Part shown: piece after piece, positions 15,422 through 34,422 of the stretch | Layout of the letters: the number at the start of each line of letters is the position of its first letter | Numbering within the stretch: the first letter of the stretch is position 1 | IMG/VR virus record: IMGVR_UViG_3300026078_000017 | Location: 186,001-250,000 of that record | Direction: 5' to 3' (one strand) | DNA: 64,000 nucleotides | Program-made: the position numbers and the translations under genes | The notes under the pieces: model-generated | Told to the model about the DNA's origin: nothing | The model's database searches: none | What the model saw: the letters and a program-made list of their open reading frames with translations, nothing else

Positions 15422-17263
15422 TTATACCGATGTTCCTTCAATATCAAAGTCCTTGTATCGGATTTCGAAAATAGATCCTGGTGGGCCAATGATAATACCC
15501 TTGGTTGTGTTAGAAGCCACGTCGAACTGTGCTGAACTGTAAACTCTACTGTTCTGTGCACCAGTAAGGTTCTTCACAGAAACGTTCGTTACAGACACAA
15601 CACCGTTGTTATTGAAAATAAGATTCTGCAAGTCAGATAGAATGATTGGTTGGTCAATCTCAAAGTGCTTTATAGAAAAGTACTGTGTCAATCTTGACAC
15701 AATGTTTTGAAGAACGAGTTTCTTGTTCTTGGTTGGGTCGATCACCACAGAAAACTCAACCTTGAGGTTGATGATTTGAGCATCGAGAATATCGATGGCA
15801 TCAGAAATCATTCTGAAGGAATTCAAATAGGTCTGAAGGTTCTTCTTCAAGCTATCTGGAGACACAACAAGTTGACCTTGTTGATTTCTCGAAATGATGT
15901 AAAGTTGAGTTGCAAGTGGGTTGTTCTGGTTGGACCTAACAGAAGCACGATAAACTCTTCCAAAGTTGGAAGGCATCGTATACACACGGGCAAGCAAGTC
16001 TGGCTTTGTGACAATGCGACTCTGGGAGGCACGAACTGCTGGAATGCGAGTCTTTAGTTCGTCTGTGGTTGGAGCGTCATCTCCTCCTCCAGCATCTTGT
16101 TCATTTACTGCATCTACGGATTTTCTAACGAAAGATGCAACAGATGTACTTGGACCATTTGGGAAACTAATGTTGAGAGTACCAACACCTCTAATAGCTC
16201 CACCAATGACGTTGTGTTTCAAACCACCACCATATCTGTATTCTACAGACAAGGTCGAGTTTGGAGAAATAACACCAAATGTCGTGGTCTGAAGAAGATT
16301 GCCAGGATTCAAGGTAAATCTGGAGAAAGTCTTCTTTCCATAGAGTGGAACTGCAAACTCACTTGGATCTGGAATGATGTCATCATCCAAGGTAGAAGCA
16401 CCACTTCCACCAAAGGTCAAAGACGTAAGGCGTGTCTGAATGTCAGTTCTCTTGATAAAACGATATGGAGCTGGAATGATAGCCAAGTTTTCTTGAACCA
16501 GTTCATTGTCATCGTTTCGGTTAATCAGAGCCTGGAATACTGTGTCTTGGGTCAGGTACTCAACTTCATAGTACTTGTTGCCCTGTGAGTCAGAAACTGA
16601 AATGACCTCAGTAACATTTTCTTTTGAAAGGGTGAACTTCTTGAAAGCCTCGAAATTTCCGATAGAGAAAGACTCGACCTGACGATTACCAGAAAGAGCT
16701 GTGCCCTTTCGAGACATGATGAATGCTGTAGGATTGTTATTCGCATCTCTTCCAGAGATACGAACGCTCGCAACATAGTTGCCGTCAATCGTTTCAGAAA
16801 AATCTAGGTCATCCACAAGTTCGAAGGATGTACCCACGTTTGAAGGGAAGGTTGTACCTGCCTCAATAACTGGGATAGCTGCTAGAAGGGGAGCCGGAGG
16901 GTTTTGGTTTGGGTCGGCTGGGACTTCGAGAGAGATCGTAATATCCACGACAGCCGGGGACGAACCAACGATATCAACACCCGCATTTCTGAGGTGGCGT
17001 TCGATATTCCGAAGCTCAACAGACGAATTCGGGTCCAACTCATGGAACTGATGATCGAGATAGAAACTTTGTACGTCCCCAATATACGCGGCAAATTCCA
17101 AGAACATACCACCAAGCGAAGGCTCGCTAAGGTCACGAATGCGATCCGGGAAGTGTACTCTTGCATATTCAAACAAATCCTGCTTAAAACCAGAGAAATC
17201 CTTGTTTAAGTATTTTCTGGTCTTGATTTGCTTTAAAATCTGCTTTCGTGAATCAGTTGGCAT
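15422..17263 (-). CDS. Baseplate wedge protein (T4 gp6 / baseplate J-like)
   Basis: NKDF..FKQDL.EYA..HFP...D.SE...GGMFLE..AYIGD N-terminus; YRYGGG, GGGDDAPT..ELK, SRIVT..D motifs; follows gp25. Confidence 0.85.
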   Translation of the reverse strand: MPTDSRKQILKQIKTRKYLNKDFSGFKQDLFEYARVHFPDRIRDLSEPSLGGMFLEFAAYIGDVQSFYLDHQFHELDPNSSVELRNIERHLRNAGVDIVGSSPAVVDITISLEVPADPNQNPPAPLLAAIPVIEAGTTFPSNVGTSFELVDDLDFSETIDGNYVASVRISGRDANNNPTAFIMSRKGTALSGNRQVESFSIGNFEAFKKFTLSKENVTEVISVSDSQGNKYYEVEYLTQDTVFQALINRNDDNELVQENLAIIPAPYRFIKRTDIQTRLTSLTFGGSGASTLDDDIIPDPSEFAVPLYGKKTFSRFTLNPGNLLQTTTFGVISPNSTLSVEYRYGGGLKHNVIGGAIRGVGTLNISFPNGPSTSVASFVRKSVDAVNEQDAGGGDDAPTTDELKTRIPAVRASQSRIVTKPDLLARVYTMPSNFGRVYRASVRSNQNNPLATQLYIISRNQQGQLVVSPDSLKKNLQTYLNSFRMISDAIDILDAQIINLKVEFSVVIDPTKNKKLVLQNIVSRLTQYFSIKHFEIDQPIILSDLQNLIFNNNGVVSVTNVSVKNLTGAQNSRVYSSAQFDVASNTTKGIIIGPPGSIFEIRYKDFDIEGTSV

Positions 17264-18012: not shown

Positions 18013-19601
18013 TATTCTCCGAAGATTCTTTCTGACTTGGCTTTCTCGACAATAGAGTTGTCACCACTGCCTACTAGATTTTGTTCTTTTTGAGTAATTG
18101 TTTGTTGAAGTTGACCTCTATAAAGAGTATTCGACAAAATTTGACTGGATGCAATTGCCTGAAGGGAAGCAATGTTGCTATATGGAACCGCAATGGCAGT
18201 GTTGAAAGCTGTCTCCAAGGTAGTCGTCAAACTTGAACAGAAGTCCTTCAAGGCATTTACTTGATCCTGAAGATTCTGAATGGAGTTCTTGTATTCTGAC
18301 CACTTGATGTATGGCTCAGCCTTTCCAGTTGCCTTGCCCAGGTACATCTCTGGGGCATACATCTGAAGCTTGCCATTTTTATCAATATACAGATAAGCAA
18401 GGTCATCTTCATTATCTGCTTGACGAATGATTAGGATGGTTCCATCGATTTGGTCGGTCTTTCTGGCAATCACACGAATGTGGTCTGCCTTGGCAGCAAC
18501 ATAAGACTTACCAATAGTACCATCGTTTCCATCTTGAGGTTGTTCAAACTCTAGGGTATCATCAGGAAAACTGACATCTGTCAACTTGAAGTTTTTGTCA
18601 AGTTCTGACTGCATCGTAACCATAATACGAGCAGCATCATTCTCCATGTCAGGATCACCCTCACGTGGGTTATCTTGCTTTCCTTCTTGAAGATATGGGG
18701 TTTTGTTTACCTCTTCCACATGACGAGAGTTCTCTACGACACGTGGAGCTGTCTCTTCTGGATCCGTGTTCTCATCTGGAGGGAGCTTACGAGCACGTCC
18801 TGCGACTATGTCAATAGAACCTGCCTGACCGATAGCATCTGCTTCAGCACGAACCACAGGACCCGTTCTGTCTTCTCCAAAAACAATCATGGAGTTGTTC
18901 TTGCCCTGAAGAACAAACTCACCTACGCGTTTGTTGAATCTAGGAACAGGTTCAAAGGTGAAGTTCTTTATCGAGTTGCTGCCCTCCACAATGCCATCGT
19001 AGGGGTTTTCGTTGTTTGACCCAGTAACTCTAAGGGTCAAGGTCTGAGGCGTGTCAGCACCATTTGGGAAGCTTGGAGTATGGTCCTGGTCTCGTCCACG
19101 TTCTGTGGTGGATAGGAGTTGTGGATTGTATTCCGGAAAGAATCTACGGTCATGAACGTTATAGTTCACATCCTCAATAGTTCTCTGTTCTGAGACTCTG
19201 GAAATCCAATAGCCAACCACCGTTCCACTTCGACTTGGATCTGGGAAAATAACCCAAACCTGTTCGCCAGGAACAATAGGAAGTTCAATATAGGAAGAGA
19301 ACAAAGGAAACAACACAGTAGAGATAGGGTTACCACTGTCTGCCGAGTCTGAAACCATTCTTGCCAAAATGGAGTTGACAGGAAGAATGTCTACGAGTTC
19401 AGGGTTGTTTACCTGTTCAGCAAGTGCTTGTTTCTGGTCATCTGACAAAGCACTAGGGTTATCCAAAACCTCTACTACAACAGCCCTTTGAAGGGTTGGA
19501 GCTTGACCTTGTGTTTGAACTGCCCTGATTTCCTGAGTAGGCTGACCAAGGGTCGAACCTCCCACAGCTCTTCTAGAAACCGCACTTGATATTCTTGCCA
19601 T
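18012..19601 (-). CDS. Baseplate hub/central spike protein (gp5-like OB-fold)
   Basis: N-terminal AVVVEV...PLFSSYIELPIVPGEQVWVIF...GYW OB-fold-like pattern, beta-rich C-terminus, position upstream of gp25. Confidence 0.55.
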   Translation of the reverse strand: MARISSAVSRRAVGGSTLGQPTQEIRAVQTQGQAPTLQRAVVVEVLDNPSALSDDQKQALAEQVNNPELVDILPVNSILARMVSDSADSGNPISTVLFPLFSSYIELPIVPGEQVWVIFPDPSRSGTVVGYWISRVSEQRTIEDVNYNVHDRRFFPEYNPQLLSTTERGRDQDHTPSFPNGADTPQTLTLRVTGSNNENPYDGIVEGSNSIKNFTFEPVPRFNKRVGEFVLQGKNNSMIVFGEDRTGPVVRAEADAIGQAGSIDIVAGRARKLPPDENTDPEETAPRVVENSRHVEEVNKTPYLQEGKQDNPREGDPDMENDAARIMVTMQSELDKNFKLTDVSFPDDTLEFEQPQDGNDGTIGKSYVAAKADHIRVIARKTDQIDGTILIIRQADNEDDLAYLYIDKNGKLQMYAPEMYLGKATGKAEPYIKWSEYKNSIQNLQDQVNALKDFCSSLTTTLETAFNTAIAVPYSNIASLQAIASSQILSNTLYRGQLQQTITQKEQNLVGSGDNSIVEKAKSERIFGE

Positions 19602-19638
19602 AATCGTTAAATAGTTACAGTCAAGAATTCAAAATAGT

Positions 19639-20091
19639 CTAATGTTTTGCTGAAGCTTCTATTTGGTCGTAAAGTGCGTCTTCTGTTAGTTCCGTTGTTT
19701 CCTTCTTACGGGCAGCACCAACCAGTTCAACCAGCTTCAAAAGCTGGTCATTTGCCTTTGACATACGTTCAAGGTACCTTGACAAGTTTTGTCCATGAAT
19801 AGCATGTTCTGAAGGCTTACCTTGAACTTCCATGTAAAGGTCAGTCCAAATAATATAGGCATTCATACGATCCGTAATGGAGTTCTCGTAAATCTGTCTC
19901 CACAGGGATTTTTGTTTGTCTTCTGTGCTGGCAAGAGTTTCCAACAGCTCATTGAAAGACGCTAGTTGTTCGGTGGTCTTCTCTCTTAGAGAGTCAATGT
20001 TCTCACCAACAAAATTCCCCACAGGACTGTTAGTTTCAAGTTCTTCATCGTCTGTTATCAAAGCCTGTTGTTTTTTAGAATTGGAACTCAT
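19639..20091 (+). CDS. Hypothetical helical protein (150 aa)
   Basis: Only plus-strand ORF filling the gap; convergent with the sigma gene (17-nt overlap). Confidence 0.6.
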
Positions 20092-20917
20092 CGCGTTTCT
20101 TTAGCTCCCTGTAGTGTTTCTTCAAAGAAGCCAAAACAATGCTCAGTTGCTTGGAAGAAAGACCTGTGATCTCTCTTAAATATAGTAGAATGGCTCTTTT
20201 ATTCAAGAGGTCCACTTCATCTAGATTTTCAACCAAAATCTTGATTGCCTTAACGCAATTTTGTTCGTTGTCAGTCTTTACCTTGACGCCAATTTCTCTA
20301 ATCAAGGCAGTAATCTGATTTTTAAGTTCTCTACCAGCCATAATCTCCTCACCGTCAGGAGCAATGTTGTAAGACTCAATGGTCTCCAAGTCCTGCTGAG
20401 AGATGGCATCCTTGTTGTCAATGGATATGTAGGTTTGAGTCTTCTTGGCGTTCTGTTTTGACTTTATGGTCAACCAGTGTTTCGCAACGACGTTGAAGTA
20501 GGAGAAAGCCTTAGAACCCTTTTCAGCATTGAACTTTGGAAGGGCTCCATACAAGAACTCCAAACACTCATTCTTGAGATCTGTACGACTCTCATACATA
20601 ACAGTAAAGCCATATACGTTAATGAGGTTCTCAACCAAGGAATCAAAGGCAGGGTAAATCTGCTCTAGGTAGATTTTGTTCTTACCGTTGTAGGTTGTTT
20701 CTTTCTGATAAGCAACAATGGATTTTTGGGTATTGTGGTCGAAGTAGTTGATGGTCTTTGTGCCAGGCTTTTTTCTAGAAATCTTTCTTTTTCCAGATAG
20801 CGTTAACTCTTCGGTTGGAGCAGTTGACATTTTAGTAGTGTTGTCCGATTTATCTTTCAATGGACGGCGGGAGTCTGTCTTTTCTTCCACCTTCGAGTTC
20901 TTGTTCGTCTTCTTCAT
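20075..20917 (-). CDS. Phage sigma-factor-like protein (gp55-like late sigma); probable start 20830
   Basis: Region-2-like DLKNECLEFLYGALPKFNAEKGSKAFSYFNVVAKHWL (compare KF.....PFAYF of gp55-type sigmas). Confidence 0.65.
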   Translation of the reverse strand: MKKTNKNSKVEEKTDSRRPLKDKSDNTTKMSTAPTEELTLSGKRKISRKKPGTKTINYFDHNTQKSIVAYQKETTYNGKNKIYLEQIYPAFDSLVENLINVYGFTVMYESRTDLKNECLEFLYGALPKFNAEKGSKAFSYFNVVAKHWLTIKSKQNAKKTQTYISIDNKDAISQQDLETIESYNIAPDGEEIMAGRELKNQITALIREIGVKVKTDNEQNCVKAIKILVENLDEVDLLNKRAILLYLREITGLSSKQLSIVLASLKKHYRELKKRDEFQF

Positions 20918-21233
20918 CGGACCTCACTGTTATATATCTCTCTTTACTAAGACGAGTAAAGTCGTTGATTAATGCCACAAGGGCTGTTCTACTGAGACGA
21001 ACACTGCTTAAGGCTTCCTCAACAGCGTATTTTACTTCTTTTGAATCAAAGAAAAGCTTCATTTCTAGAAGACTCTCTAGTGCTCCATATATTCCATTTA
21101 AAGTCTCAAGTGCATTTTCCAACTTGTCTTCAATTGAGAAGATAATTCTGGCAAACTTGATCAGATAGAAGGTTTCAACCCCTAAAAGACCTAACAAAAG
21201 AACAATAAGAGTAACTAGGAGAAATATCAACAT
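20850..21233 (-). CDS. Membrane-anchored coiled-coil protein
   Basis: N-terminal hydrophobic helix (LIFLLVTLIVLLLGLLGV) followed by a heptad-rich region. Confidence 0.55.
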   Translation of the reverse strand: MLIFLLVTLIVLLLGLLGVETFYLIKFARIIFSIEDKLENALETLNGIYGALESLLEMKLFFDSKEVKYAVEEALSSVRLSRTALVALINDFTRLSKERYITVRSDEEDEQELEGGRKDRLPPSIER

Positions 21234-21234
21234 T

Positions 21235-22413
21235 TTACACTACGCTTCCCAAAACCGCATCATAAGCTGTGGAAATTGCTTGAAAAGAGTGTGTTTTCAA
21301 CAATTTACCCTGAAGCTCCTCAGCCCACTGTTTTGGAATGGTCGAGTTTTCATAGAACTTGAGGACACGCTTCTTGAAGTCTTCCTCGTCAGCAATGCCC
21401 CATTGAGAGCCTGGCATCCAGATTTCATTGTCAAAACGACCTGGAGGAACTGCTCCTACCTTGGTATCAACCTTGATGTACTTGCCTTGACCCAGGAACT
21501 CTGTGTGAGCTGACCAACCAGAGGCAATCACTGGAACACCGCTTGCTGCCGCCTCTAAAATCGGTAAACCGAATCCTTCACCATGGGTGAGGGTTACTAG
21601 CGCCTTGATGGAAGGGTGCTTATAGAGCCTTACAACCTCCTCGTCGTTCATTTCCCCGTGAAGAAGATAAAGTTTTGGATTTGTGCCTTTGTTGACTTGG
21701 CTAAGAAGACCCGTCAACTGTTGCTTGCACAAGAACTCATCTGCCTTGGTGTAACGACCCATGTTGGTCTTCAGAACAATGCCAACGTCTGGCTTGTCTG
21801 CAAAGACCTCAAACAGCCACTTGAGCGTAAATGGAAGGTTCTTTCGGTCGGTAGCTGCGTCACCACCCGTGATCTGACCAAATACCAAGAAGTTAAATGC
21901 CGTGTCGGTTTTGAAGTCAAGAGGCTCAACTGTGGAAGACTCTAGAATCTTGTCAAAGAAAGCCTCGGGAACAACAACGATTGGGGTTGTGACCTTTCCA
22001 GAGTTCATGAACACAGACTTGGTAAACTCAGAAGGAACAATAACCAAGGTCATCTTGTTTACGTGTTCAATCCACTTTGGATTACAGCGGTCTGCCTCTA
22101 CGCCTGCCGTCATACCAATATTTACCTTACCAAGTTCAGGACACCACTCATTTGGGAGCTGGAGTTGGATTGTCACATCATAAAGCTTCTTTTGCTTTTG
22201 GGTGGCACTTGCCTGAAAACAACGACCAATCAGGTCATTCTGGGCATAGGTGTCAACATACCAAGGAGTACCTCCCCAGTTCAAAAGTTCTGTCGTAATG
22301 TCCAAGTTGCCATTCTTGTCGGCACGGTCAAACAACCACCTTGCAACTTGTCTTGCGTGAACTCCATAACCACTCTGTGAAAGAAGTGGCGCTCTCAGAA
22401 GAACTGTTTTCAT
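21235..22413 (-). CDS. Glycosyltransferase, GT4/GT-B fold
   Basis: SGYGVHAR N-terminus; HGEGFGLPILEAAASGVPVIASGW (EX7E) motif. Confidence 0.85.
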   Translation of the reverse strand: MKTVLLRAPLLSQSGYGVHARQVARWLFDRADKNGNLDITTELLNWGGTPWYVDTYAQNDLIGRCFQASATQKQKKLYDVTIQLQLPNEWCPELGKVNIGMTAGVEADRCNPKWIEHVNKMTLVIVPSEFTKSVFMNSGKVTTPIVVVPEAFFDKILESSTVEPLDFKTDTAFNFLVFGQITGGDAATDRKNLPFTLKWLFEVFADKPDVGIVLKTNMGRYTKADEFLCKQQLTGLLSQVNKGTNPKLYLLHGEMNDEEVVRLYKHPSIKALVTLTHGEGFGLPILEAAASGVPVIASGWSAHTEFLGQGKYIKVDTKVGAVPPGRFDNEIWMPGSQWGIADEEDFKKRVLKFYENSTIPKQWAEELQGKLLKTHSFQAISTAYDAVLGSVV

Positions 22414-23852
22414 TTTGCGCTTGCCTTTGTGATTTTGATGTTTTTCATCAAGTGAGCCGTAATGTCCATTGGAAGTTTTGCAACACTTGGGTCAATTTTA
22501 ATTTGCTTCTGTTCAAAGAGCTGTTGAGTAGCTTCCTGTTGATTCTTTGGTTGTGGATTTGGATTATCGATGAGAGAAAGACTCCAAGTCTTTGGTTTGT
22601 TTGCCTTGTACTTGAGGATTGTGTCTTCAAGGGTTCTATCCCAGTCAGCAACCATCTTCTCATAAGAGAACTCAAAGTTCGTGTACTCAAGTAGCTTCTG
22701 CTTCATAGCTACTTTCTCTTCTGGTGTGTACTCGTAAACCTTCATGAAGGCATCCACAACCTGTTGGTGATTTGTGAAGTCTTCATAAATGTATGGAACC
22801 ATCTGAGAACCAACGAGCTGTTGACTTGCTGGTGGAATGGCTACTCCGTTTTCTGAGCCGTCTCTGTGATCAATGACCTGACGAGTCAAACCACCAGTGG
22901 TAAGAGCAATGATTGGCTTACCAACCATCATCTGAATCAAGGTAGACAAACCAAAACCTTCAGCCTTGGCAATGTTGATTAGAACGTCAGACATGTTGTG
23001 AACGATGTTCATGTCACTTGGATTAAGCTTTTCTGTGGAGAACATCAGGTGCTCTCTAAGACCATAGAGATTGCTTACCTCAGCCAAGTTGCCGCCTTCG
23101 ACGTCAAATGGATCTGTGTGCATAATCATCATGGCTTTTCTGTGTCCATGCTTTTTTTCAAGAGCATCAAGGAACTCACTGAAGCATGCAATGACATCAG
23201 AGCCCATTTTACGATGAGCATTTCGGTTAACCCACAAGACCTTGAACCAGTCAGCCTTGTCTCCGAACTTGCCAGTATTGAACTCCGTCATCTTTTCTTC
23301 AGGAAGTGGATAGTAGATTTCCTTTGGAAAGCTGTGAGGAATGTAGTTCGTCTTCTCAGGGAAATGAGGCTGAACTAACTCATATGTCTTATATGCAAGA
23401 CAGTTGATGAGGTCAGTTGAGTTGTACCAAATCTCATTGAACTTTGGATATGGACCATTATCCCACACGTGCCAGTAAACAAGTGGAGCGAGTTGATGAA
23501 TTTCATCCAAGACTTCCCAGGTCCAAATGAACTGACGTGGATCAGTAAACAAGAACACAGCATCTGGACGCTCTGACAACAAGATCTGACGAAGTTGTTC
23601 CTTCGTACCAAAACCATCAACTGGTTTGATGATCATGTCAGGATGTGGTTGAGATACACGATAATCGGAGTGCTTCTGTGCACCACCCAAACAAACAAAC
23701 TTGTACTTGCCGGTATTGAGTAGACCATTGAACAATGCGCCAGCCTGGACGCCTACACCTGAGGTAGACAAAGGATGATCGCAAAGCGTTAAAATCTTGA
23801 ACTTCTTTTTGGGAAGTTGTGCCTGTATGTCGCTTGGGTTAAATCCGGTCAT
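22410..23852 (-). CDS. Glycosyltransferase, GT4/GT-B fold
   Basis: SGVG N-terminus; NRNAHRK; AEGFGLSTLIQMMVGKPII motif. Confidence 0.85.
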   Translation of the reverse strand: MTGFNPSDIQAQLPKKKFKILTLCDHPLSTSGVGVQAGALFNGLLNTGKYKFVCLGGAQKHSDYRVSQPHPDMIIKPVDGFGTKEQLRQILLSERPDAVFLFTDPRQFIWTWEVLDEIHQLAPLVYWHVWDNGPYPKFNEIWYNSTDLINCLAYKTYELVQPHFPEKTNYIPHSFPKEIYYPLPEEKMTEFNTGKFGDKADWFKVLWVNRNAHRKMGSDVIACFSEFLDALEKKHGHRKAMMIMHTDPFDVEGGNLAEVSNLYGLREHLMFSTEKLNPSDMNIVHNMSDVLINIAKAEGFGLSTLIQMMVGKPIIALTTGGLTRQVIDHRDGSENGVAIPPASQQLVGSQMVPYIYEDFTNHQQVVDAFMKVYEYTPEEKVAMKQKLLEYTNFEFSYEKMVADWDRTLEDTILKYKANKPKTWSLSLIDNPNPQPKNQQEATQQLFEQKQIKIDPSVAKLPMDITAHLMKNIKITKASAK

Positions 23853-25855
23853 TTCTTTGTTTCCATTTCAAGTAACAATGTACGCTGTCTATCGCTCGTT
23901 ACTGTGTCTTTCATTAAGTTCATCAAGTCATCTTGATACATTATTTTGGCAAGTTCCTTGAACTTTACTTTTGGTTCCCAACCAAGAATGTTTCTTGCTT
24001 TTGTTGGGTCGCTTTCAAGATGCGTAACTTCATGAGGTCTGAGTTGTTGTGGGTCGAACACTACGTATTTTTCCCAATCTAGCCCTGCTTGTTCAAAAAC
24101 TGCAATTACAAACTCTTTTACAGAGTGACTTTCTCCTGTGCCAATAACGAAGTCATCTGGAACATCATGTTGAAGCATTTTCCACATGCACTCCACGTAC
24201 TCTCTGGAGAAACCCCAGTCACGCTTGGCGTCAAGGTTACCCAGAAGAAGCTTGTCTTGTTTACCCAAGGTAATGTTTGCTACAGCCTTTGTAATCTTTC
24301 TTGTTACGAAGTTTTCGCCACGTCTTGGAGATTCATGATTATGTAAAATACCAACGGCAATGAACATTTTGTATGCCTCACGATAGTTCACACAAATATT
24401 ATGTGCAGCTACCTTGGCACAAGCATAAGGACTTGCTGGCATGAAAGCGGTCTGTTCATTCTGAGGATGTTGGGGATTGAAACCAAACTGCTCAGAAGAA
24501 CCAGCCTGATAAATACGGGTATGAGGAATCAAAACCTTTGCTGCGTTGAGAAGTCTGAGGGTTCCCATGGCAACAACATCAAATGTCTCTTCAGGACAGT
24601 CAAAGCTGACTCTTACATGAGACTGAGCTGCTAGATTGTAAATCTCATCAGGCTTGTATTCTTCCAAAATCTTCCACAGGGAACTTGAATCCTGCATGTT
24701 TCCATAAACAGAAATGAAGTTTGGATGTTCGATTATGTTCTTCATCCATGGGTGCATGCTTTGGGAGTTTCGACGAAACATACCAACAACGACGTAGTTC
24801 TTCAAAAGTAAGAACTCAGCAAGGTAGCTTCCATCTTGACCAGCCACTCCAGTGATTAAGGCGACTTTACGGTGAGTGTCTTCTTTTTTCATGTTTGGAT
24901 TTTTATTCTGGGTTTCCAAGAAGAAATCATAAGCATTTTTTAATGAATCTTCGAAGGTAATTTTAGGCTTCCAACCCAATTTTGTCTGTCTTGACACATC
25001 CGAAAGTTTTTGAAACATTCCATCAGGTCTTGAGGTGTTGAAGGCAAACTTGATTTTTTGTTCAGAACCTACCTTGGTTTCCCCAGTAAGAACCTCAACA
25101 GCCTTTTCATAGATTTCCTTGATACTCAGGTCATATCCAGTAGACACGTTCATGATGTCTGGAACTTCATCGAACTTATCCAAGGAGAAAAAGATAAAAT
25201 CTGCTAAGTCAGCAGCATCCATGAACTCTCTTCTTGGTGTGCCAGTTCCCCAAATCTCAATATAAGTGTCAGACTGTGTTTCCAGTCTTATCTTGGCCTC
25301 ATGAACCTTACGAATGATGGCTGGAAGAAGATGGCTTGCTTCAGGGTCAAAGTGATCCCATCTACCAAACAAGTTGCAAGGAATATAGGTTTTATATGAG
25401 ACACCCTTTTCTTCAGAAGCATACTGACAGGCTCTTTGAACTGCATTTTTAGCAATCGCGTAACCTTCATTGGTTGGCTCAAGAGGACCAGTGAACAGAT
25501 ACGACTCCTTCATTGGCTGTTGAGCCTCACGTGGATACATGCAGGTAGAACCAAGATTAATCATCTTGGATACCCCGAGCTGTTTTGCAGCTCTTACCAC
25601 ATTCAAACCCATGGTGATGTTATCCATCATGAAATTGAACATGTTGGTTTTGTTGGCCTGAATGCCACCAACCAAGCCAGCCGTGTGAATGATGAGGTCT
25701 GGCTTGGTAATGTCTATTGTCTCAACAACTTGAGCAAAGTTCAACAAGTCGAGGTCCTTGCGTGAGGGAGCAATGATTTCGTGTTGTTGAGCTGCTGGAT
25801 GTTCTAGGATATTTCTTCCTACCATTCCAGTGCCACCAGTTAAAAGGATCTTCAT
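23849..25855 (-). CDS. fcl-gmd: Fused GDP-L-fucose synthase (Fcl/GMER, about aa 1-315) and GDP-mannose 4,6-dehydratase (Gmd, aa 322-668)
   Basis: Two Rossmann motifs (TGGTGMVG; ITGVAGQDGSYLAE). Fcl motifs STCMYP, YAIAK, WGTGTPRREF; Gmd motifs NLAAQSHV, SSEQFG, SPYACAK, NHESPRRGENFVTRKI. Confidence 0.92.
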   Translation of the reverse strand: MKILLTGGTGMVGRNILEHPAAQQHEIIAPSRKDLDLLNFAQVVETIDITKPDLIIHTAGLVGGIQANKTNMFNFMMDNITMGLNVVRAAKQLGVSKMINLGSTCMYPREAQQPMKESYLFTGPLEPTNEGYAIAKNAVQRACQYASEEKGVSYKTYIPCNLFGRWDHFDPEASHLLPAIIRKVHEAKIRLETQSDTYIEIWGTGTPRREFMDAADLADFIFFSLDKFDEVPDIMNVSTGYDLSIKEIYEKAVEVLTGETKVGSEQKIKFAFNTSRPDGMFQKLSDVSRQTKLGWKPKITFEDSLKNAYDFFLETQNKNPNMKKEDTHRKVALITGVAGQDGSYLAEFLLLKNYVVVGMFRRNSQSMHPWMKNIIEHPNFISVYGNMQDSSSLWKILEEYKPDEIYNLAAQSHVRVSFDCPEETFDVVAMGTLRLLNAAKVLIPHTRIYQAGSSEQFGFNPQHPQNEQTAFMPASPYACAKVAAHNICVNYREAYKMFIAVGILHNHESPRRGENFVTRKITKAVANITLGKQDKLLLGNLDAKRDWGFSREYVECMWKMLQHDVPDDFVIGTGESHSVKEFVIAVFEQAGLDWEKYVVFDPQQLRPHEVTHLESDPTKARNILGWEPKVKFKELAKIMYQDDLMNLMKDTVTSDRQRTLLLEMETKK

Positions 25856-26538
25856 TTTCTTACCTTAAAGACTCCATAACTGACACAGTCATTGTAGACT
25901 GGGCTATAAAGTAATGATTTGTCTGCGTTTTGCTTCATTACAACTGCATCACATGGTTCAAACAAGTCAAAGGCATCAAGAGTAAAGTCTGTCATGCCAT
26001 ATGAGGTATTTTGATCCTCTGTCTTTAGGCCAGCTCGGTTTCTGGCTCTTTCAAGTTCATTCCATGGAAGACATGACTGGTCATAGTGATCCCAGTACTC
26101 ATCCAAGGTAATAACCATTTTTCCACCTGGACGAAGAACTCTGTGCATTTCCTTCAAAATCTTCTTGAAGAGGTCAAAGTTATCAATGTGTTCAAATGTA
26201 GAAATGGCGTAAACTAAGTCGATGGAGTTATCTGGCATCTGAAGGTTCGATGCATCCATCCACAAGACTTTATGGTTTGGAGTATTGATTTCTTCATTCT
26301 TGATTCGAGAGTCGAAGTCAAATCCAAGGTAGGATTTCGGCTTTAGGTTGTCTCTAACGAACTCATGCCAGTTGTGCTCTGAAGGTAAACCAGTTCCAAA
26401 GTCAATAACGTCCAATCCTTCTACAGGCTCTACAAAAGCAGCCCACATGTACTCATAAGGTCTGGAACCCCAGTTTCCAAAACGAATGCCAGGCAACTGT
26501 GGGTCTGAGGTTTTAAAGTATCCAAATTTTTTCATCAC
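25852..26538 (-). CDS. Class I SAM-dependent methyltransferase
   Basis: VIDFGTG motif I; DASNL..PDNSIDLVYAISTFEHI; RVLRPGGKMVIT. Confidence 0.85.
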   Translation of the reverse strand: MMKKFGYFKTSDPQLPGIRFGNWGSRPYEYMWAAFVEPVEGLDVIDFGTGLPSEHNWHEFVRDNLKPKSYLGFDFDSRIKNEEINTPNHKVLWMDASNLQMPDNSIDLVYAISTFEHIDNFDLFKKILKEMHRVLRPGGKMVITLDEYWDHYDQSCLPWNELERARNRAGLKTEDQNTSYGMTDFTLDAFDLFEPCDAVVMKQNADKSLLYSPVYNDCVSYGVFKVRK

Positions 26539-27473
26539 AACACCTTCAGGATATTATTGATTCGATTCACGAAAGTGTGTTTGTCCTTGACCTTTTGAAC
26601 CAATTCTCTTAGCGTTTGGGGATCTGGGTTTTCTTCCCACAGTTTTGCCTTAAGGTACATTTCTGCTGTGTCAGGAGAATATGGAAGCTTTTGGTCAAAC
26701 AAATCCCACACCGTCTGAGAGTTGGTTGCCGTCATACGACCAAAGGATAGGTTTTTAAAGACACGACAAGGCACATAGCCCTTGTCTACTTGCCAGGACC
26801 CCTGAAGGGCTGGGGCTATCCAGGACTCGGCTATAGCACGAGGCTGGAGGTCATTCTGGAGCTTGGCATGAATAAGTTGGACTCCATCACCCTTGGCTGC
26901 CTGAGCCAAGTCTTGAATTTTGTCATCATTCCTGTGAGGACCACCCATGATGCTACCAATCCAAAAGATTTGCTTGCGACGTTTGTGTTGCATGGCAATC
27001 GTGTGGTCTGGGTCTATTTCACTTGGAAGCAGATTTGTTGCCCATGGTTGGTAAAGAGTTCTGTTGTCACACCCGTGATCAGGTCTGGAATAATCCGGAT
27101 CTTTTTGATAATAGGCGAGCTGTTCAAGGTCAACAGGAACAACATTTCTTGTCAAACAGTCATGAGTGTAAACCTGAAGGTTCAAGACGTTCGGAAGAAT
27201 AGGGCGATACTTGTCCAGGTTGCAGTTATGAATGACGTACTTGCTTGACGCAACAATTGGAATGTTTTGATCAACCTGTCCTTCAGTGAGGAACAGGCAA
27301 TTCTCAAAAGAAAGACCAGAGACATCATCGGAGTTGTCCAGCCATAAAACCTCATATCCCATGTAGTTGAAGGTTCGATACCAGGAGTCATGAATAAAAG
27401 CAAAAGTGTTTGCCGTTCTAGCATCCAGGAGTTTATGACCCCAAACAACTACCTTGTTAAATTTTTCTGTCAT
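26535..27473 (-). CDS. Putative glycosyltransferase (CgeB-like GT-B)
   Basis: IFWIGS and YVPCRVFKNLSFG resemble CgeB-type RxFE motifs; cluster context. Confidence 0.5.
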   Translation of the reverse strand: MTEKFNKVVVWGHKLLDARTANTFAFIHDSWYRTFNYMGYEVLWLDNSDDVSGLSFENCLFLTEGQVDQNIPIVASSKYVIHNCNLDKYRPILPNVLNLQVYTHDCLTRNVVPVDLEQLAYYQKDPDYSRPDHGCDNRTLYQPWATNLLPSEIDPDHTIAMQHKRRKQIFWIGSIMGGPHRNDDKIQDLAQAAKGDGVQLIHAKLQNDLQPRAIAESWIAPALQGSWQVDKGYVPCRVFKNLSFGRMTATNSQTVWDLFDQKLPYSPDTAEMYLKAKLWEENPDPQTLRELVQKVKDKHTFVNRINNILKVL

Positions 27474-28479
27474 ACGTTTCCTTTTCTAAAAACTGATCAA
27501 GCCTTCTGGAAAGTTCTTCATAGGAGATGACAACATCTTTAGAGGAATAGTCCTTAAAAGGACCAGAAGCCTTCTGACGTGACCAGGACTCCCTGATGCA
27601 ATATGCAAAGCCATAGTCTTCCTTCTTTATGTCCTCAAGTTCGTTCATCATGATTTCATGAATCTTTTCTCCAGGACGAATACCAATGATTTTAGTAGGC
27701 TTGTTGAACTTCTTGCTAAAATATGTGGCAAGGTCTTCAACCTTGAATGAGTCGAGTTTTGGAACCCACATAGAACCTGAAGTGCCATAGGCAAGAGCCA
27801 TGTCAATAAGCTTAACCGACTCCTCCAGAAGCATCATGAACCTTGTCATGTTCGGATCTGTAATGGTAAAGGCTTCAGCCTCCTTGGCTTGCTTTAAAAA
27901 CAAGGGAACGATACTTCCTCTTGAGGAGATAACATTTCCATATCTTGTAACCATGTAGGCAACCGAACTTTTTGCAGCCGTAGCAATAACCAGTTTCTCA
28001 GAAATGCTCTTACACATGCCATATACGTTAATCGGATTGCATGCCTTGTCGGTTGACACAAAACAAACTCTGGTGATTTTATTGTCTGGACGTATGGAGT
28101 TTTCCTCAATGGCATCCAGTACGTTTCTAACGCCAATTACGTTTGTGTCGATTGACTCACTTGGTTGATTCTCGCAAGTATCTACCTGTTTCAAAGCCTG
28201 TGCAATAATGACATAAGTTGGGTTCTCTTGACGAATAACCTGACTTACACGACGTGGATCACGAACATCACAAATAATCGTGCTTATTTTCTTGCGGCTG
28301 TTTAACGGAGGAAACTTGTTCTTGAGTTCCCAGTGCTTTGCTTCATCCCTGGAAACCACAACAATGTCAGAAATATATTGCCTGTAAAAGGAAACAAGGG
28401 CTTGTCCCAAAGAACCAGCCCCTCCAAAAATCAACAACTTCTTGTCAGTTAAGTTACTTACGTGTTGCATTTGCCCCAT
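27457..28479 (-). CDS. UDP-GlcNAc 4,6-dehydratase (inverting; PseB/FnlA/CapE family)
   Basis: GGAGSLG, SRDEAK, ALKQV..CE, STDKACNPINVYG.CK, RYGNVISSRGSIVPLF, TRF, GIRPGEKIHE; no N-terminal TM domain. Confidence 0.88.
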   Translation of the reverse strand: MGQMQHVSNLTDKKLLIFGGAGSLGQALVSFYRQYISDIVVVSRDEAKHWELKNKFPPLNSRKKISTIICDVRDPRRVSQVIRQENPTYVIIAQALKQVDTCENQPSESIDTNVIGVRNVLDAIEENSIRPDNKITRVCFVSTDKACNPINVYGMCKSISEKLVIATAAKSSVAYMVTRYGNVISSRGSIVPLFLKQAKEAEAFTITDPNMTRFMMLLEESVKLIDMALAYGTSGSMWVPKLDSFKVEDLATYFSKKFNKPTKIIGIRPGEKIHEIMMNELEDIKKEDYGFAYCIRESWSRQKASGPFKDYSSKDVVISYEELSRRLDQFLEKETYDRKI

Positions 28480-29342
28480 CCGAAGTAAGTGTCTATCGGA
28501 ATCTGGAAGTTGTGTTCCTTGGCTTTTATGAATTGATCCATTTTAATTCCCCTGATTTCCTCGGGCATTATTGTCCTGGAAATGAAGTCTGCCACGAAGT
28601 CAGTCTTGGCTTGGTGATGTTGTTGACTCTGATGATCCCAGTTACTGGACCTACAATAGTGCAAGAAGGCATTTCCAAAGAACTCAAGGTTCCACTCAGG
28701 ATTGTATGAACCAACAATCTCATCAGGAAGACAATGCATGTTTTTGTTTTCTGGCTTGATATGCCAGGTGTTGTGCATGGTTCTTACTGCGGCTTTCACC
28801 TCAGGATGCTTCTCAAAATACAAGTGAAGTCCACCACCCGTGTCAAGACGAGTGTTGTTAATTCCAATACCTTCCCAGTCAATCGTCTCAGCCTCTGGCA
28901 ACAGCTCAGGATTTGCCATCACAATCACAGGTGTGAGATAGTGGTAAATGTGATCTCTCTGTTGTTTACACCCACCAAAGGTTCCTGTGTCTCCAAGAAA
29001 CTCATTGACGGAAAATGGAGCAACCATAAAGCAGTCGCCATCAAGGAACATCACATAGGAATCCTTGTGTTTACACATGTCAGAACGCCAAACCATGTTC
29101 AAGGAATCGGCATGATGTTTTCCTGCCAGGTGAAAGGGTGTATCTGAGTGAGTCTGGATTGTAAAAAGCCCAGCAGCTTCTGCTGTTGTATTAATAGCAT
29201 CTCTCAAACTCTGTTCTCTGGCATTATTGATGATGGTGAAGTCAAAAGGGTCTTTTAGGTGCTTTTGAAGGGTCATCAACTGCCATCTGATAAACTCAGG
29301 ACGATTGTAGTGAACAGCATATACATGTACAGGTTTAGTCAT
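28458..29342 (-). CDS. Putative GT-A fold glycosyltransferase
   Basis: VHYNRPEFI...TIINNA...MFLDGDCF (DxD) pattern. Confidence 0.55.
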   Translation of the reverse strand: MTKPVHVYAVHYNRPEFIRWQLMTLQKHLKDPFDFTIINNAREQSLRDAINTTAEAAGLFTIQTHSDTPFHLAGKHHADSLNMVWRSDMCKHKDSYVMFLDGDCFMVAPFSVNEFLGDTGTFGGCKQQRDHIYHYLTPVIVMANPELLPEAETIDWEGIGINNTRLDTGGGLHLYFEKHPEVKAAVRTMHNTWHIKPENKNMHCLPDEIVGSYNPEWNLEFFGNAFLHYCRSSNWDHQSQQHHQAKTDFVADFISRTIMPEEIRGIKMDQFIKAKEHNFQIPIDTYFGWGKCNT

Positions 29343-30189
29343 TTTCTTTCATCCACTCTCTCAGTTCACAAAGTTGATCACAAATGTTTGGTGCTTCTCC
29401 ATTGCTAGGCAACAGAGCACGATTGACTGCTTTTGGAGCTTTAACATTTTCAACCAAAGGATTTTTCCACTCATTACAAAACACGTTGCTAATGTTAACC
29501 AGAAGATCATATTTTGTTATTGGTGCACTTGCTAGTTGTACGAGCATTCCTGGTGGAAGAGTTAGCAATTGACTTTTGTTGAAAATAAATCTCTCAAGGT
29601 ATTGAGCCAAATATAAAGTTGTTACACCAGACCAAATATGGTTGTTAAATCCTGGAACGCTTTGTTTTGGACTGTTCCTAAACCACTCAAACAAACCATG
29701 TTCAGTGTCGGCCGGACCAATGATGCTTGTCCTTACCACGATAGTGTCTGATGGTTCTCCAAGAGCCTTAGAAATACCATAGTCATCATCTGCGTCCTTT
29801 GGTGCTGAGGCGATATATCGTTCACCTGGTTTGAGGTCGCCCTTAAACACACAGTCACTTGAAATGTGAATTAGTTTGACATTAGCCTTTTTACAAGCCA
29901 ATGCCAGCTTCCATGGAAATACAGCATTAACCTCATAAAAGTCTGAGGACTTCAATCCTTCTTTTTGCTTGATGTTTCCAATGCAGTTAATGACAAAGTC
30001 ATAACCTTCAAAACTTGGTAGCAAGTCCGACTTCACGTCAAACTTGATAACTCCCACAGCTTTTCTTGTAGGCATCCAAGAAGGAATTTTGTCTCGAACA
30101 GTAAAGGTAACATTGTGATCTTTAGAAATCAAATACCTAACAACCACACTGCCCAACATCCCTGTGCCGCCGAGTACCAATACTTTCAT
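29335..30189 (-). CDS. RmlD-like NDP-sugar 4-keto reductase (SDR)
   Basis: LGGTGMLG, VINCIG, HISSDCVF, YGISKALGE (YxxxK), RTSIIG, WSGVTT. Confidence 0.85.
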   Translation of the reverse strand: MKVLVLGGTGMLGSVVVRYLISKDHNVTFTVRDKIPSWMPTRKAVGVIKFDVKSDLLPSFEGYDFVINCIGNIKQKEGLKSSDFYEVNAVFPWKLALACKKANVKLIHISSDCVFKGDLKPGERYIASAPKDADDDYGISKALGEPSDTIVVRTSIIGPADTEHGLFEWFRNSPKQSVPGFNNHIWSGVTTLYLAQYLERFIFNKSQLLTLPPGMLVQLASAPITKYDLLVNISNVFCNEWKNPLVENVKAPKAVNRALLPSNGEAPNICDQLCELREWMKEND

Positions 30190-30875
30190 GTTCTCATTTC
30201 CTTGTGGTTTTTATCAAGAGCCAAGAGTCTCTTCTGAAATGGAAGAGACCAGGACTCAGGATAACAGTAAGAAGGCGACAAGGACAAAGTAGGAGGATTA
30301 TCGATAAAATACCTGTTCATGTGAGACTCATCATGCCAAACGGCTATGATATTTTTGGCTTTATCTTCCAAAACACGACTACCAATGGTTTCACACATCT
30401 TCAGGTATTCTTTAGCAGAACCTCCATTGAATCCACCAGCATAATACACAGTGCCCTCTGAAGGCGCTACAAAGGCTTTGGAGACACGATTGGTCTCATA
30501 GGTGAATGCCTCCCTTGGCTTGTTGAAAAAGCCCGGGTGGATGGTTCCTACGCGGTCTGAGAGCACTTCATCCCCAACCGTGTCCACAAACAACATGTCG
30601 GCATCACAATAAAAGAGATAATCCATCTCTTCTAGTTGCTTCTTTGTCGAAGGCATGGTGAACACATTATACCGAAATAAGGTTGGTCCCGGCCAAGCCA
30701 TATGGATTTGTGGGATAATAACCTGACCAGGTTCTGGTGTGATGCCATGTTTGTTTGTGAAGACAAACATAGTAACCTCATGTTTGGTCAAAAAATGCTT
30801 TTTAACCGACTCCCATAAAGGTGGTACAAAGTCATAGTATTTATTTGTGGCAATAACCAACAGTCCAATTTTCAC
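30186..30875 (-). CDS. GT6 family glycosyltransferase (ABO-like alpha-1,3-GalNAc/Gal transferase)
   Basis: IATNKY, WP..TL.RY, YLFYCDAD, HPGF, YYAGGFNGG, WHDESHMNRYF: the full GT6 motif set. Confidence 0.9.
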   Translation of the reverse strand: MKIGLLVIATNKYYDFVPPLWESVKKHFLTKHEVTMFVFTNKHGITPEPGQVIIPQIHMAWPGPTLFRYNVFTMPSTKKQLEEMDYLFYCDADMLFVDTVGDEVLSDRVGTIHPGFFNKPREAFTYETNRVSKAFVAPSEGTVYYAGGFNGGSAKEYLKMCETIGSRVLEDKAKNIIAVWHDESHMNRYFIDNPPTLSLSPSYCYPESWSLPFQKRLLALDKNHKEMRT

Positions 30876-30879
30876 AGGA

Positions 30880-31882: not shown

Positions 31883-31883
31883 G

Positions 31884-32606: not shown

Positions 32607-32609
32607 AAA

Positions 32610-34414: not shown

Positions 34415-34422
34415 TTGATTCC

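What the first reader, a model, noticed from the sequence alone, without database searches (positions are those of the whole stretch)
23849..25855. Single-chain Fcl-Gmd fusion (complete GDP-mannose to GDP-L-fucose pathway)
Seen: an intact Fcl domain joined in frame through ETQNKNPN to a Gmd domain that still starts with Met322 (ATG 24892). Known: Gmd and Fcl are normally separate genes; here the second-step enzyme is N-terminal. Inference: a recent stop-loss fusion or a selected channelling enzyme, possibly with internal initiation. The related GDP-colitose reductase cannot be excluded by eye.
Basis: partly seen in the sequence, partly recalled or inferred. Interest (0 to 1): 0.6.

Follow-up and report, generated by a model that had tools for sequence, protein, structure and literature searches.

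The report
Fused sugar-nucleotide enzyme in jumbo phage
A 320-kb phage carries one gene that joins the two enzymes turning GDP-mannose into a 6-deoxy sugar donor (most likely GDP-L-fucose). The fusion is real and old within this phage family, but such fusions are common in sequence databases, and the first domain is closer to a colitose enzyme than to textbook fucose synthase.

Summary
There is one uninterrupted 668-aa ORF at 23849-25855 on the minus strand. An Fcl/ColC-type epimerase-reductase domain (residues 1-318) is joined by a disordered linker of about 10 residues, containing Met322, to a Gmd domain (330-645). All catalytic residues are present in both domains.

The window lies in a 320,479-bp IMG/VR jumbo-phage record. 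The fusion is neither an artefact nor recent. 28 fused homologues (57-83% identical) form one clade in both domain trees and sit in syntenic phage glycan clusters. Their sister is a split fcl->gmd pair separated by 54 nt. Other Fcl-Gmd and Gmd-Fcl fusions arose independently.

The N-domain is not a canonical Fcl. It is 43.6% identical to E. coli O55 ColC and 35.9% identical to E. coli Fcl, and it scores far below NCBIfam's Fcl cut-off. However, it lies outside the ColD-linked ColC clade, and the record has no ColD. GDP-L-fucose is therefore the likeliest product, but this is not shown.

A start-type codon before the Gmd core is kept across the clade, often with an SD-like motif, so internal initiation is plausible. 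Interest is moderate.

The parts
23849..25855 (-). Fused ORF, 668 aa plus stop (P0001)
   Evidence: single ORF. Logan contig identical over the region. ATGA start/stop overlaps with both neighbouring genes.
24902..25855 (-). N-terminal Fcl/ColC-type GDP-4-keto-6-deoxyhexose epimerase/4-reductase domain (residues 1-318)
   Evidence: NF047922 scores 286-298 bits against a cut-off of 500. Best PDB hit is GDP-L-fucose synthase 7ll6, E 1e-67. S103/C105/Y132/K136/H175 correspond to E. coli S107/C109/Y136/K140/H179. 43.6% identical to E. coli O55 ColC and 35.9% to E. coli Fcl.
24869..24901 (-). Linker (residues 319-329, TQNKNPNMKKE...), variable in length and sequence among homologues
   Evidence: AF2 pLDDT is below 50 for residues 319-326. 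Alignment of 24 homologues.
24890..24892 (-). ATG of Met322, 8 codons before the Gmd core (KVALITG); a possible internal start
   Evidence: 21 of 28 clade members have Met 3-11 residues before the core. In sequenced members without Met, the codon is GTG (3), TTG (1) or ATT (1). The window itself has no SD-like motif upstream.
23921..24868 (-). GDP-mannose 4,6-dehydratase domain (residues 330-645)
   Evidence: PF16363 E 5.7e-136. TIGR01472 scores 412.8 bits against a cut-off of 415. Arabidopsis MUR1 1n7g E 5.6e-104, with the GxxGxxG, SSE, YxxxK and NHESPRRG motifs aligned.
23852..23920 (-). C-terminal helical tail (residues 646-668), present in only part of the clade
   Evidence: helix 632-667.
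22410..23852 (-). GT4-type glycosyltransferase (480 aa), start overlaps the fusion's stop; conserved next to the fusion in all clade loci examined
21235..22413 (-). Second GT4-type glycosyltransferase (392 aa), conserved
25852..26538 (-). SAM-dependent methyltransferase (228 aa) directly upstream; its stop overlaps the fusion's start
   Evidence: Conserved in L006, L014, L016-L019.
26535..27473 (-). 312-aa GT-B-fold glycosyltransferase of a family without a Pfam model, mostly viral
27457..28479 (-). PseB/FnlA-like UDP-GlcNAc 4,6-dehydratase (Polysacc_synt_2)
29335..30189 (-). RmlD-like SDR reductase
30186..30875 (-). GT6 glycosyltransferase (blood-group A/B transferase family), DAD motif, acceptor residues of the 2'-fucosyl-Gal type
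   Evidence: PMC3516806.
31884..32606 (-). GT2 glycosyltransferase
15422..17263 (-). Baseplate wedge protein. It marks the structural module that follows the glycan cluster in every clade locus long enough to show it.

Best explanation
The gene encodes a single-chain, two-domain enzyme of a jumbo phage. [quoted passage not shown] The N-terminal Fcl/ColC-type domain epimerises and reduces that intermediate with NADPH to a GDP-6-deoxy-L-hexose, most likely GDP-L-fucose. This sugar donor feeds the neighbouring phage-encoded glycosyltransferases: two GT4, one GT-B orphan, GT6 and GT2. Together they build a fucosylated, methylated glycan, possibly with a blood-group-like Fuc-Gal core extended by GT6.

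The fusion arose once, at the base of this phage family, from adjacent fcl->gmd genes by loss of the stop and spacer. It fixes 1:1 stoichiometry and proximity of two enzymes that are known to interact and stabilise each other when separate.

Shown: the architecture, the intact catalytic residues, the conservation, the single origin, the synteny, and the absence of ColD and ManC. Inferred: the product's identity, the use of host GDP-mannose, the glycan, and its target.
For: - Domain calls and catalytic residues. In an alignment of 36 diverse Fcl-Gmd fusions, C105, Y132, K136, H175, S454, E455, Y477 and K481 are invariant.
- AF2 model: two confident domains (mean pLDDT 90.7) and a disordered linker at 319-326.
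- Phylogeny: the 28 fused homologues are monophyletic in the Gmd tree (SH-aLRT 100) and the Fcl tree (92). The sister is the split pair L009 (support 92 and 94), and stand-alone genes lie outside.
- Synteny of MTase / fusion / GT4 / GT4 / ... / baseplate wedge in L006, L014-L018.
- No ColD/DegT homologue in the 320-kb record (Pfam search; tblastn with E. coli O55 ColD at E<=10 gives only noise). None in the clade loci either.
- No NTP_transferase/ManC, so GDP-mannose must come from the host, as for chlorovirus PBCV-1 (PMC9614988).
- The window clade lies outside the ColD-linked ColC clade (95*).
- The cluster's GT6 has His/Gly/Ala at the positions that in BoGT6a and GTA/GTB accommodate a 2'-fucosyl acceptor (PMC3516806).
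- Separate plant GMD and GMER form a complex that stabilises GMD (Nakayama 2003, as cited in PMC11501016).
Against: - The N-domain scores 286-298 bits on NCBIfam's Fcl equivalog model (cut-off 500). That is the same level as genuine E. coli O55 ColC (304 bits), while canonical phage Fcl proteins score 444-461.
- It is more similar to ColC than to E. coli Fcl. It shares 7 of 10 ColC-versus-Fcl discriminating positions with ColC.
- No GT11/GT10-type fucosyltransferase was found, and no neighbour resembles WcaI or the O55 transferase. The enzyme that uses the GDP-sugar is therefore unidentified.
- The record is only about 81% complete, so a ColD gene could lie in the missing part.
- No expression or protein data exist: no RNA run holds the sequence.
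Confidence: 0.6

Rival explanations
1. The N-domain is a ColC-type GDP-L-colitose synthase. The fusion supplies steps 1 and 3 of a colitose pathway, and the ColD 3-dehydratase comes from the unassembled 19% of the genome or from the host.
For: - 43.6% identity to E. coli O55 ColC against 35.9% to E. coli Fcl.
- Same NCBIfam score level as ColC.
- 72 of the 80 nearest stand-alone relatives in JGI metagenomes are followed by a ColD-like gene (median 64% identical to O55 ColD).
- ColC-type residues at 7 of 10 discriminating positions.
Against: - The window clade is outside the clade that holds O55 ColC and all the ColD-linked genes (95*).
- No DegT/ColD in the record, nor in seven related loci or in the split sister L009.
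- Fusing enzymes 1 and 3 while leaving enzyme 2 elsewhere makes little kinetic sense.
Confidence: 0.1
2. The fusion makes a different GDP-6-deoxyhexose, for example a 5-epimerised-only or differently reduced product such as GDP-6-deoxy-L-gulose or GDP-6-deoxy-L-talose. The N-domain would then belong to a third, uncharacterised lineage beside Fcl and ColC.
For: - The clade is separate from both canonical Fcl and the ColC clade.
- At the position of E. coli Asn172, in the loop after the substrate-binding Asn165, Fcl has N, ColC has K and the window clade has H.
- The cluster holds two methyltransferases and orphan glycosyltransferases, which suggests an unusual glycan.
Against: - The Cys/His acid-base pair needed for both epimerisations is conserved, along with the Ser-Tyr-Lys triad.
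- The GT6 acceptor residues fit a fucosylated galactose.
- Other clearly Gmd-fused lineages are equally divergent from the Fcl model (P0037 N-domain scores 302 bits), so divergence alone does not imply a new product.
Confidence: 0.15
3. The gene works mainly as two proteins. A retained internal ribosome-binding site and start codon in the linker produce free Gmd in addition to, or instead of, the fusion.
For: - 21 of 28 clade members keep a Met 3-11 residues before the Gmd core although the linker is otherwise unconserved. Only 7 of 35 do in other, independently fused lineages.
- In the 8 junctions with DNA in hand, the codon is ATG x3 (P0001, P0019, P0022), GTG x3, TTG x1 and ATT x1. Six have AGGA/GGAG/AAGG 6-11 nt upstream. 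The same motifs precede 13.7% of internal ATGs and 41.9% of real starts in this genome.
Against: - The window's own junction has no SD-like motif.
- Lys/Glu/Gly-rich linkers make AAGGA-like strings by composition.
- The sequences are phylogenetically related, so the counts are not independent.
- The full-length frame is maintained in every member, which shows selection on the fused product.
Confidence: 0.35
4. The fusion is an assembly or sequencing artefact, or a very recent stop-loss in this one genome.
For: The linker DNA is A-rich with homopolymer runs. Only one public run, probably the source, holds the sequence.
Against: - An independent assembler gives the identical sequence at depth about 29.
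- 27 other fused homologues with different linker sequences come from other samples.
- Both domain trees are congruent.
Confidence: 0.02

Closest known systems
E. coli K-12 Gmd (b2053) and Fcl/WcaG (b2052), colanic acid cluster
   Same: Same two SDR-family enzymes and the same catalytic residues. Same pathway logic: GDP-mannose to the 4-keto-6-deoxy intermediate to GDP-L-fucose.
   Different: In E. coli they are separate genes in the order gmd->fcl. Here they form one chain in the order fcl->gmd. The N-domain is only 35.9% identical to E. coli Fcl and scores far below the equivalog cut-off.
Virus-encoded GMD and GMER: chlorovirus PBCV-1 A118R/A295L; cyanophage gmd/fcl pairs (S-CAM7, ACG-2014f, DSL-LC02/03)
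   Same: The virus supplies both de novo enzymes and relies on host GDP-mannose. The genes sit beside glycosyltransferases, and in DSL-LC03 beside an annotated alpha-1,2-fucosyltransferase.
   Different: These are always two genes. The cyanophage Fcl proteins are canonical (444 bits on NF047922). PBCV-1 GMD has an extra reductase activity, for which there is no evidence here.
E. coli O55 ColC (GDP-L-colitose synthase) with ColD
   Same: The closest characterised relative of the N-domain by sequence (43.6%). The Cys/His/Ser/Tyr/Lys set is conserved.
   Different: ColC is always followed by ColD. The phage clade has no ColD and branches outside the ColC clade.
Fcl-Gmd and Gmd-Fcl fusions in bacterial metagenome-assembled genomes (e.g. 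a Pirellulaceae MAG protein of 722 aa and a Candidatus Magasanikbacteria protein of 676 aa, both auto-named 'GDP-mannose 4,6-dehydratase')
   Same: Same two domains in one chain; 100 of the 120 best hits are such fusions.
   Different: They have independent origins: at least 6 changes are forced by well-supported branches in each domain tree. Linkers are longer (40-70 aa) and mostly have no Met before the Gmd core. I found no paper that characterises any of them.
Bacteroides Fkp (bifunctional L-fucokinase / GDP-fucose pyrophosphorylase)
   Same: A single-chain enzyme that delivers GDP-L-fucose in two steps (from my own knowledge, not tested here).
   Different: It belongs to the salvage pathway, with unrelated folds and substrates.

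Membership tests
[quoted passage not shown] | Full-length match to the family profile at or above the curated cut-off | tested here: inconclusive
   PF16363 scores 453.8 bits (cut-off 27), covering profile positions 1-332 of 332. TIGR01472 scores 412.8 bits against a cut-off of 415, i.e. 2 bits short; the domain alone scores 406.9. The split sister L009 gmd scores 400.3.
[quoted passage not shown] | NADP-binding GxxGxxG, the Ser/Thr-x-Glu and YxxxK catalytic residues, and the NHESPRRG substrate loop | tested here: met
   ITGVAGQDGSYL, QAGSSEQFG, SPYACAK and NHESPRRGENFVTRKIT align with Arabidopsis MUR1 1n7g. They are invariant in 36 fusions.
[quoted passage not shown] | Dehydratase activity on GDP-mannose | not testable with these tools
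   Needs an enzyme assay.
GDP-L-fucose synthase (Fcl/GMER; NF047922) | Score at or above the equivalog cut-off | tested here: not met
   298 bits (286.5 for the domain alone) against a cut-off of 500. Canonical phage Fcl proteins score 444-461 and E. coli O55 ColC scores 304.
GDP-L-fucose synthase (Fcl/GMER; NF047922) | Ser107-Tyr136-Lys140 triad and the Cys109/His179 epimerisation pair (E. coli numbering) | tested here: met
   S103, Y132, K136, C105 and H175. This feature does not discriminate, because ColC has them too.
GDP-L-fucose synthase (Fcl/GMER; NF047922) | Phylogenetic placement among canonical Fcl proteins | tested here: not met
   It lies in a well-supported superclade (98*) with ColC and its relatives, apart from E. 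coli, cyanophage and L013 Fcl.
GDP-L-fucose synthase (Fcl/GMER; NF047922) | Genomic coupling to Gmd without an intervening 3-dehydratase | tested here: met
   It is fused to Gmd, and there is no DegT/ColD in the record or in related loci.
GDP-L-colitose synthase (ColC) | Adjacent or linked ColD (PLP-dependent GDP-4-keto-6-deoxymannose 3-dehydratase) | tested here: not met
   None at tblastn E<=10 in 320 kb; the Pfam DegT search is negative. The record is about 81% complete.
GDP-L-colitose synthase (ColC) | Membership of the clade that holds E. coli O55 ColC | tested here: not met
   The ColC clade (44 rows, SH-aLRT 95) excludes the window clade.
Natural Fcl-Gmd fusion proteins | Both domains in one open frame, conserved in relatives | tested here: met
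GT6 glycosyltransferase (neighbouring gene 30186-30875) | Family profile, DXD motif, conserved catalytic Glu and acceptor Trp | tested here: met
   PF03414 E 1.6e-50. NF041524 scores 214 bits against a cut-off of 250, so the NCBIfam subfamily cut-off is not reached. DAD, WHDES and H/G/A at BoGT6a positions 122/124/228.

The most novel reading that the evidence does not exclude
A whole family of soil and freshwater jumbo phages carries a conserved module: methyltransferase / Fcl-like-Gmd fusion / two GT4 enzymes, next to the baseplate genes, plus a variable O-antigen-like cassette that here includes a GT6. In this reading the fused gene yields two products (the fusion and free Gmd, from a conserved internal start). 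Its N-domain represents a third functional lineage beside Fcl and ColC. The resulting 6-deoxy-L-hexose decorates the virion (tail or baseplate) with a blood-group-like glycan.
Probability: 0.15. Interest if true: 0.7.

Novelty: new variant of a known kind. Interest (0 to 1): 0.4.

Why it matters
[quoted passage not shown] What the case adds:
- A dated example of gene fusion in a phage lineage, with the split sister state still extant.
- Evidence that Gmd and Fcl-type enzymes have been fused repeatedly and in both orders. This fits the reported physical interaction of the separate enzymes, and such fusions are ready-made one-gene cassettes for GDP-fucose supply in glyco-engineering.
- A warning for annotation: the 'Fcl' half belongs to the ColC-related branch, so the product should be determined experimentally.
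- A pointer to a conserved, diversifying glycan-synthesis module next to structural genes in an uncultured jumbo-phage family. It includes a blood-group-transferase homologue. Its target (virion or host surface) is unknown.

Tried and rejected
- Plus-strand reading of the coordinates: full of stops.
- tRNA scan of the window: none found.
- PHROGs on ten large neighbours: only baseplate wedge and primase hits.
- IMG/VR scan with the whole protein: no close fused relative. It returned only gmd->fcl split loci or Gmd-only loci. I first mislabelled L002 as fcl->gmd and corrected this.
- Sequencing runs: one DNA run, held only as contigs and probably the source sample; no RNA run. Expression and internal starts could therefore not be read from reads.
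- JGI metagenome scan with the clade's N-domain alignment: it returned no clade members, only relatives at 46-52% identity. These turned out to be ColC/ColD loci, which was useful for the colitose question but not for adding junctions.
- Pfam GT11 search: no hit.
- BLAST of the cluster's glycosyltransferases against WcaI and the O55 transferases: only GT2-to-GT2 similarity.
- Foldseek of the 312-aa protein: a generic GT-B fold (Gtf3/GtfC, T4 AGT/BGT, weak FUT9), which gives no donor specificity.
- Promoter and terminator scans: no excess over shuffles, so operon limits are not defined.
- Literature: five searches found no description of a natural Gmd-Fcl fusion. The library lacks most subscription journals, so this is not proof of absence.
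- Not run: complex prediction on the two domains. I do not claim that they dock, and the monomer pTM of 0.55 already shows no confident mutual orientation.
- Only genetic code 11 was used.
Full report
**1. The observation**

The coordinates 23849-25855 hold a single open reading frame of 668 codons plus a stop, on the minus strand. The plus strand is closed by many stops.

Pfam places an Epimerase/RmlD-type SDR domain at the N-terminus and GDP_Man_Dehyd at residues 333-639 (E 5.7e-136). NCBIfam aligns the Gmd equivalog model to residues 330-645 and the Fcl equivalog model to residues 2-317.

The junction reads ...FFLETQNKNPN-M322-KKEDTHRKVALITG. The gene's start and stop overlap its neighbours' stop and start as ATGA.

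**2. Where it is**

The window is bases 186001-250000 of a 320,479-bp IMG/VR virus record, linear, with a CheckV completeness of about 81%. It is a jumbo phage:
- A baseplate-wedge protein (15422-17263) is about 31% identical to those of Flavobacterium phage immuto, Microcystis phage Mel-JY01 and a 484-kb uncultured phage.
- A primase lies at 38020-40008.
- GC content around the gene is unremarkable.

**3. Is the fusion real?**

Only one public run holds the sequence. It is a rhizosphere metagenome and probably the source. Logan's independent assembly of that run gives a 320,363-nt contig identical over 23000-26800 at word depth 29.4, without variants.

Homologues give better evidence. The protein search returned 27 further distinct fused homologues at 57-83% identity, on contigs up to 331 kb. 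Their linkers differ in sequence and length but are always open.

Seven such loci were fetched (L006, L014-L019). They share the order methyltransferase / fusion / GT4 (~479 aa) / GT4 (~390 aa). Where the contig is long enough, the same run of small genes follows, down to the 613-aa baseplate wedge. The cassette upstream varies. The fusion is therefore a conserved feature of a phage family, not an artefact and not recent.

**4. Origin**

Among the 120 best database hits, 65 are Fcl-Gmd fusions, 35 are Gmd-Fcl fusions and 15 are Gmd only. I built maximum-likelihood trees of each domain separately. They give these results:
- The window's 28 fused sequences form one clade (SH-aLRT 100 for Gmd, 92 for Fcl).
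- The sister of that clade in both trees is the split pair of locus L009 (support 92 and 94).
- Stand-alone genes lie outside that pair.
- The other fusions fall elsewhere. Well-supported branches force at least six changes of architecture in each tree.

In L009 the genes lie in the order fcl->gmd, in the same frame, separated by a 54-nt AT-rich spacer with three stops. They sit in a related cluster that also has GT6, an RmlD-like gene, a Polysacc_synt_2 gene and methyltransferases.

A 484-kb uncultured phage also has split fcl->gmd, 11 nt apart. E. coli and cyanophages have gmd->fcl.

The simplest history is one loss of the stop and spacer on the stem of this phage clade.

**5. What the domains are**

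The Gmd half is orthodox. It hits Arabidopsis MUR1 at E 5.6e-104 with all motifs in place. It falls 2 bits below NCBIfam's equivalog cut-off.

The N-terminal half has the full catalytic set of E. coli GMER: S103, C105, Y132, K136 and H175 correspond to S107, C109, Y136, K140 and H179. Its best solved relatives are GDP-L-fucose synthases.

However, it scores only 286-298 bits on the Fcl equivalog model, whose cut-off is 500. To calibrate this I fetched genuine references:
- E. coli O55:H7 ColC, the 'GDP-L-fucose synthase family protein' that is followed by a DegT gene (ColD), scores 304 bits.
- Canonical phage Fcl proteins score 444-461 bits.

The window's domain is 43.6% identical to O55 ColC and 35.9% identical to E. 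coli Fcl.

The 80 nearest stand-alone relatives in JGI metagenomes are 46-52% identical. Of these, 72 are followed directly by a ColD-like gene (median 64% identity to O55 ColD), and most are preceded by gmd. They form one clade with O55 ColC and a ColC-DegT fusion, P0126 (SH-aLRT 95).

The window's clade, together with L009 and P0127, lies outside that ColC clade. It does fall inside a wider, well-supported group (98) that is distinct from canonical Fcl. Of ten positions that separate ColC from Fcl, the window clade has the ColC residue at seven, the Fcl residue at two and its own residue (His168) at one. The Cys/His pair does not discriminate, because ColC has it too.

**6. Fucose or colitose?**

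Colitose needs ColD between the two steps. Several results argue against it:
- The 320-kb record has no DegT-family gene (Pfam search). tblastn with O55 ColD finds nothing even at E 10.
- The related loci and the split sister have none either.
- Fusing enzymes 1 and 3 of a three-step route would be odd.

The record also lacks an NTP_transferase/ManC. GDP-mannose must therefore come from the host, as in chlorovirus PBCV-1 (PMC9614988).

The cluster's GT6 (30186-30875) provides indirect support for fucose. It has the metal-binding DAD motif of the phage/Parachlamydia type. At the positions that in BoGT6a, GTA and GTB make room for the acceptor's 2'-fucose, it has His, Gly and a small residue (Ala219). 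The alpha-3GT enzyme, which takes non-fucosylated acceptors, has Gln, Trp and Trp there (PMC3516806).

I therefore rate GDP-L-fucose as the most likely product (about 0.6), another 6-deoxy-L-hexose at about 0.15 and colitose at about 0.1. The transferase that uses the donor is not identified:
- There is no GT11 hit.
- No neighbour resembles WcaI or the O55 transferase.
- The conserved 312-aa neighbour is a GT-B enzyme of an unnamed, largely viral family.

**7. How the fusion may work**

AlphaFold2, run with a 36-sequence alignment, gives two confident domains (mean pLDDT 90.7). The linker at 319-326 has pLDDT below 50, and pTM is 0.55. This means a flexible tether and no confident fixed orientation.

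Separate plant GMD and GMER form a complex that stabilises GMD (Nakayama 2003, as cited in PMC11501016). Repeated fusion in both orders fits selection for co-expression, proximity and stability. Channelling in the strict sense is not shown.

**8. Internal initiation**

In 21 of 28 clade members a Met lies 3-11 residues before the Gmd core, at varying distances and in an otherwise unconserved linker. In the independently fused lineages only 7 of 35 have one.

For the eight junctions with DNA in hand, the codon at that place is ATG in three (P0001, P0019, P0022), GTG in three, TTG in one and ATT in one. Six have AGGA, GGAG or AAGG 6-11 nt upstream. In this genome such motifs precede 13.7% of internal ATGs and 41.9% of real starts.

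There are caveats. The window's own junction lacks the motif, the sequences are related, and the linker is Lys/Glu/Gly-rich. I rate functional internal initiation at about 0.35. The maintained full-length frame shows that the fused product is itself under selection.

**9. Comparison and novelty**

The enzymes, the pathway and virus-encoded versions of both are known. Fused proteins of both orders are already in nr, auto-named 'GDP-mannose 4,6-dehydratase'.

I found no paper describing a natural fusion. The searchable library is incomplete, so this is not proof of absence.

The case is a new variant of a known kind. It is an independently arisen, phage-borne Fcl-like-Gmd fusion whose reductase half belongs to the ColC-related branch. 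It is embedded in a conserved glycan module beside the baseplate genes.

**10. Limits**

- There are no expression data, no raw reads and no enzyme assay.
- The record is incomplete.
- The trees used a quick search with SH-aLRT support only.
- The host is unknown.
- Only genetic code 11 was used.

Noticed in passing
window 30186-30875 (-): A GT6 glycosyltransferase (histo-blood-group A/B transferase family) in a soil jumbo phage. It has a DAD metal motif and acceptor-site residues of the fucosyl-galactose type. It is 47-55% identical to GT6 genes of Prochlorococcus phage P-SSM2 and of two uncultured phages over 600 kb.
   Followed up: partly
window 26535-27473 (-): A 312-aa protein of a large family (381 hits), mostly viral, with no Pfam model. 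The AF2 model is confident (pLDDT 94.4) and has a GT-B fold nearest to the protein O-glycosyltransferases Gtf3/GtfC and the T4 DNA glucosyltransferases (TM about 0.5). It is conserved beside the fusion throughout the clade.
   Followed up: partly
window 27457-30189 (-): A PseB/FnlA-like UDP-GlcNAc 4,6-dehydratase, an unknown 294-aa ORF and an RmlD-like reductase. This looks like a second nucleotide-sugar route (a 6-deoxy-HexNAc), with no aminotransferase present.
   Followed up: no
window 35583-36632 (-): An IMPDH/GMP-reductase-family gene (349 aa, PF00478 E 3e-83) in the phage, next to a PD-(D/E)XK nuclease. It is also present in the related locus L015. A link to guanine-nucleotide supply for GDP-sugars is possible but untested.
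   Followed up: no
L014:3139-4323: A RuBisCO-large-subunit-like gene (394 aa) lies inside the variable glycan cassette of a related phage contig, beside PIG-L, Formyl_trans_N and methyltransferase genes.
   Followed up: no
L010:5698-7518: A bacterial 606-aa protein that fuses a ColC-like domain (58% identical to E. coli O55 ColC) to a DegT-family part. It lies downstream of manC and gmd, so it looks like a colitose-pathway counterpart of the fusion studied here.
   Followed up: partly
L009:6001-8001: The split fcl and gmd genes of the sister lineage are in the same reading frame, separated by 54 AT-rich bases with three stops. This is the likely pre-fusion state.
   Followed up: yes
window 19600-34432 (-): About 17 consecutive minus-strand genes, many with 4-nt ATGA-type overlaps. 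They form one tightly packed block between the baseplate module and the replication genes. Promoter and terminator scans show no excess over shuffles.
   Followed up: partly
window 36619-37092 (-): A 157-aa ORF whose first 55 residues match the N-terminal part of the T4 Gp23 major-capsid profile (E 9e-8). It may be a prohead or scaffold-type protein rather than a capsid gene.
   Followed up: no
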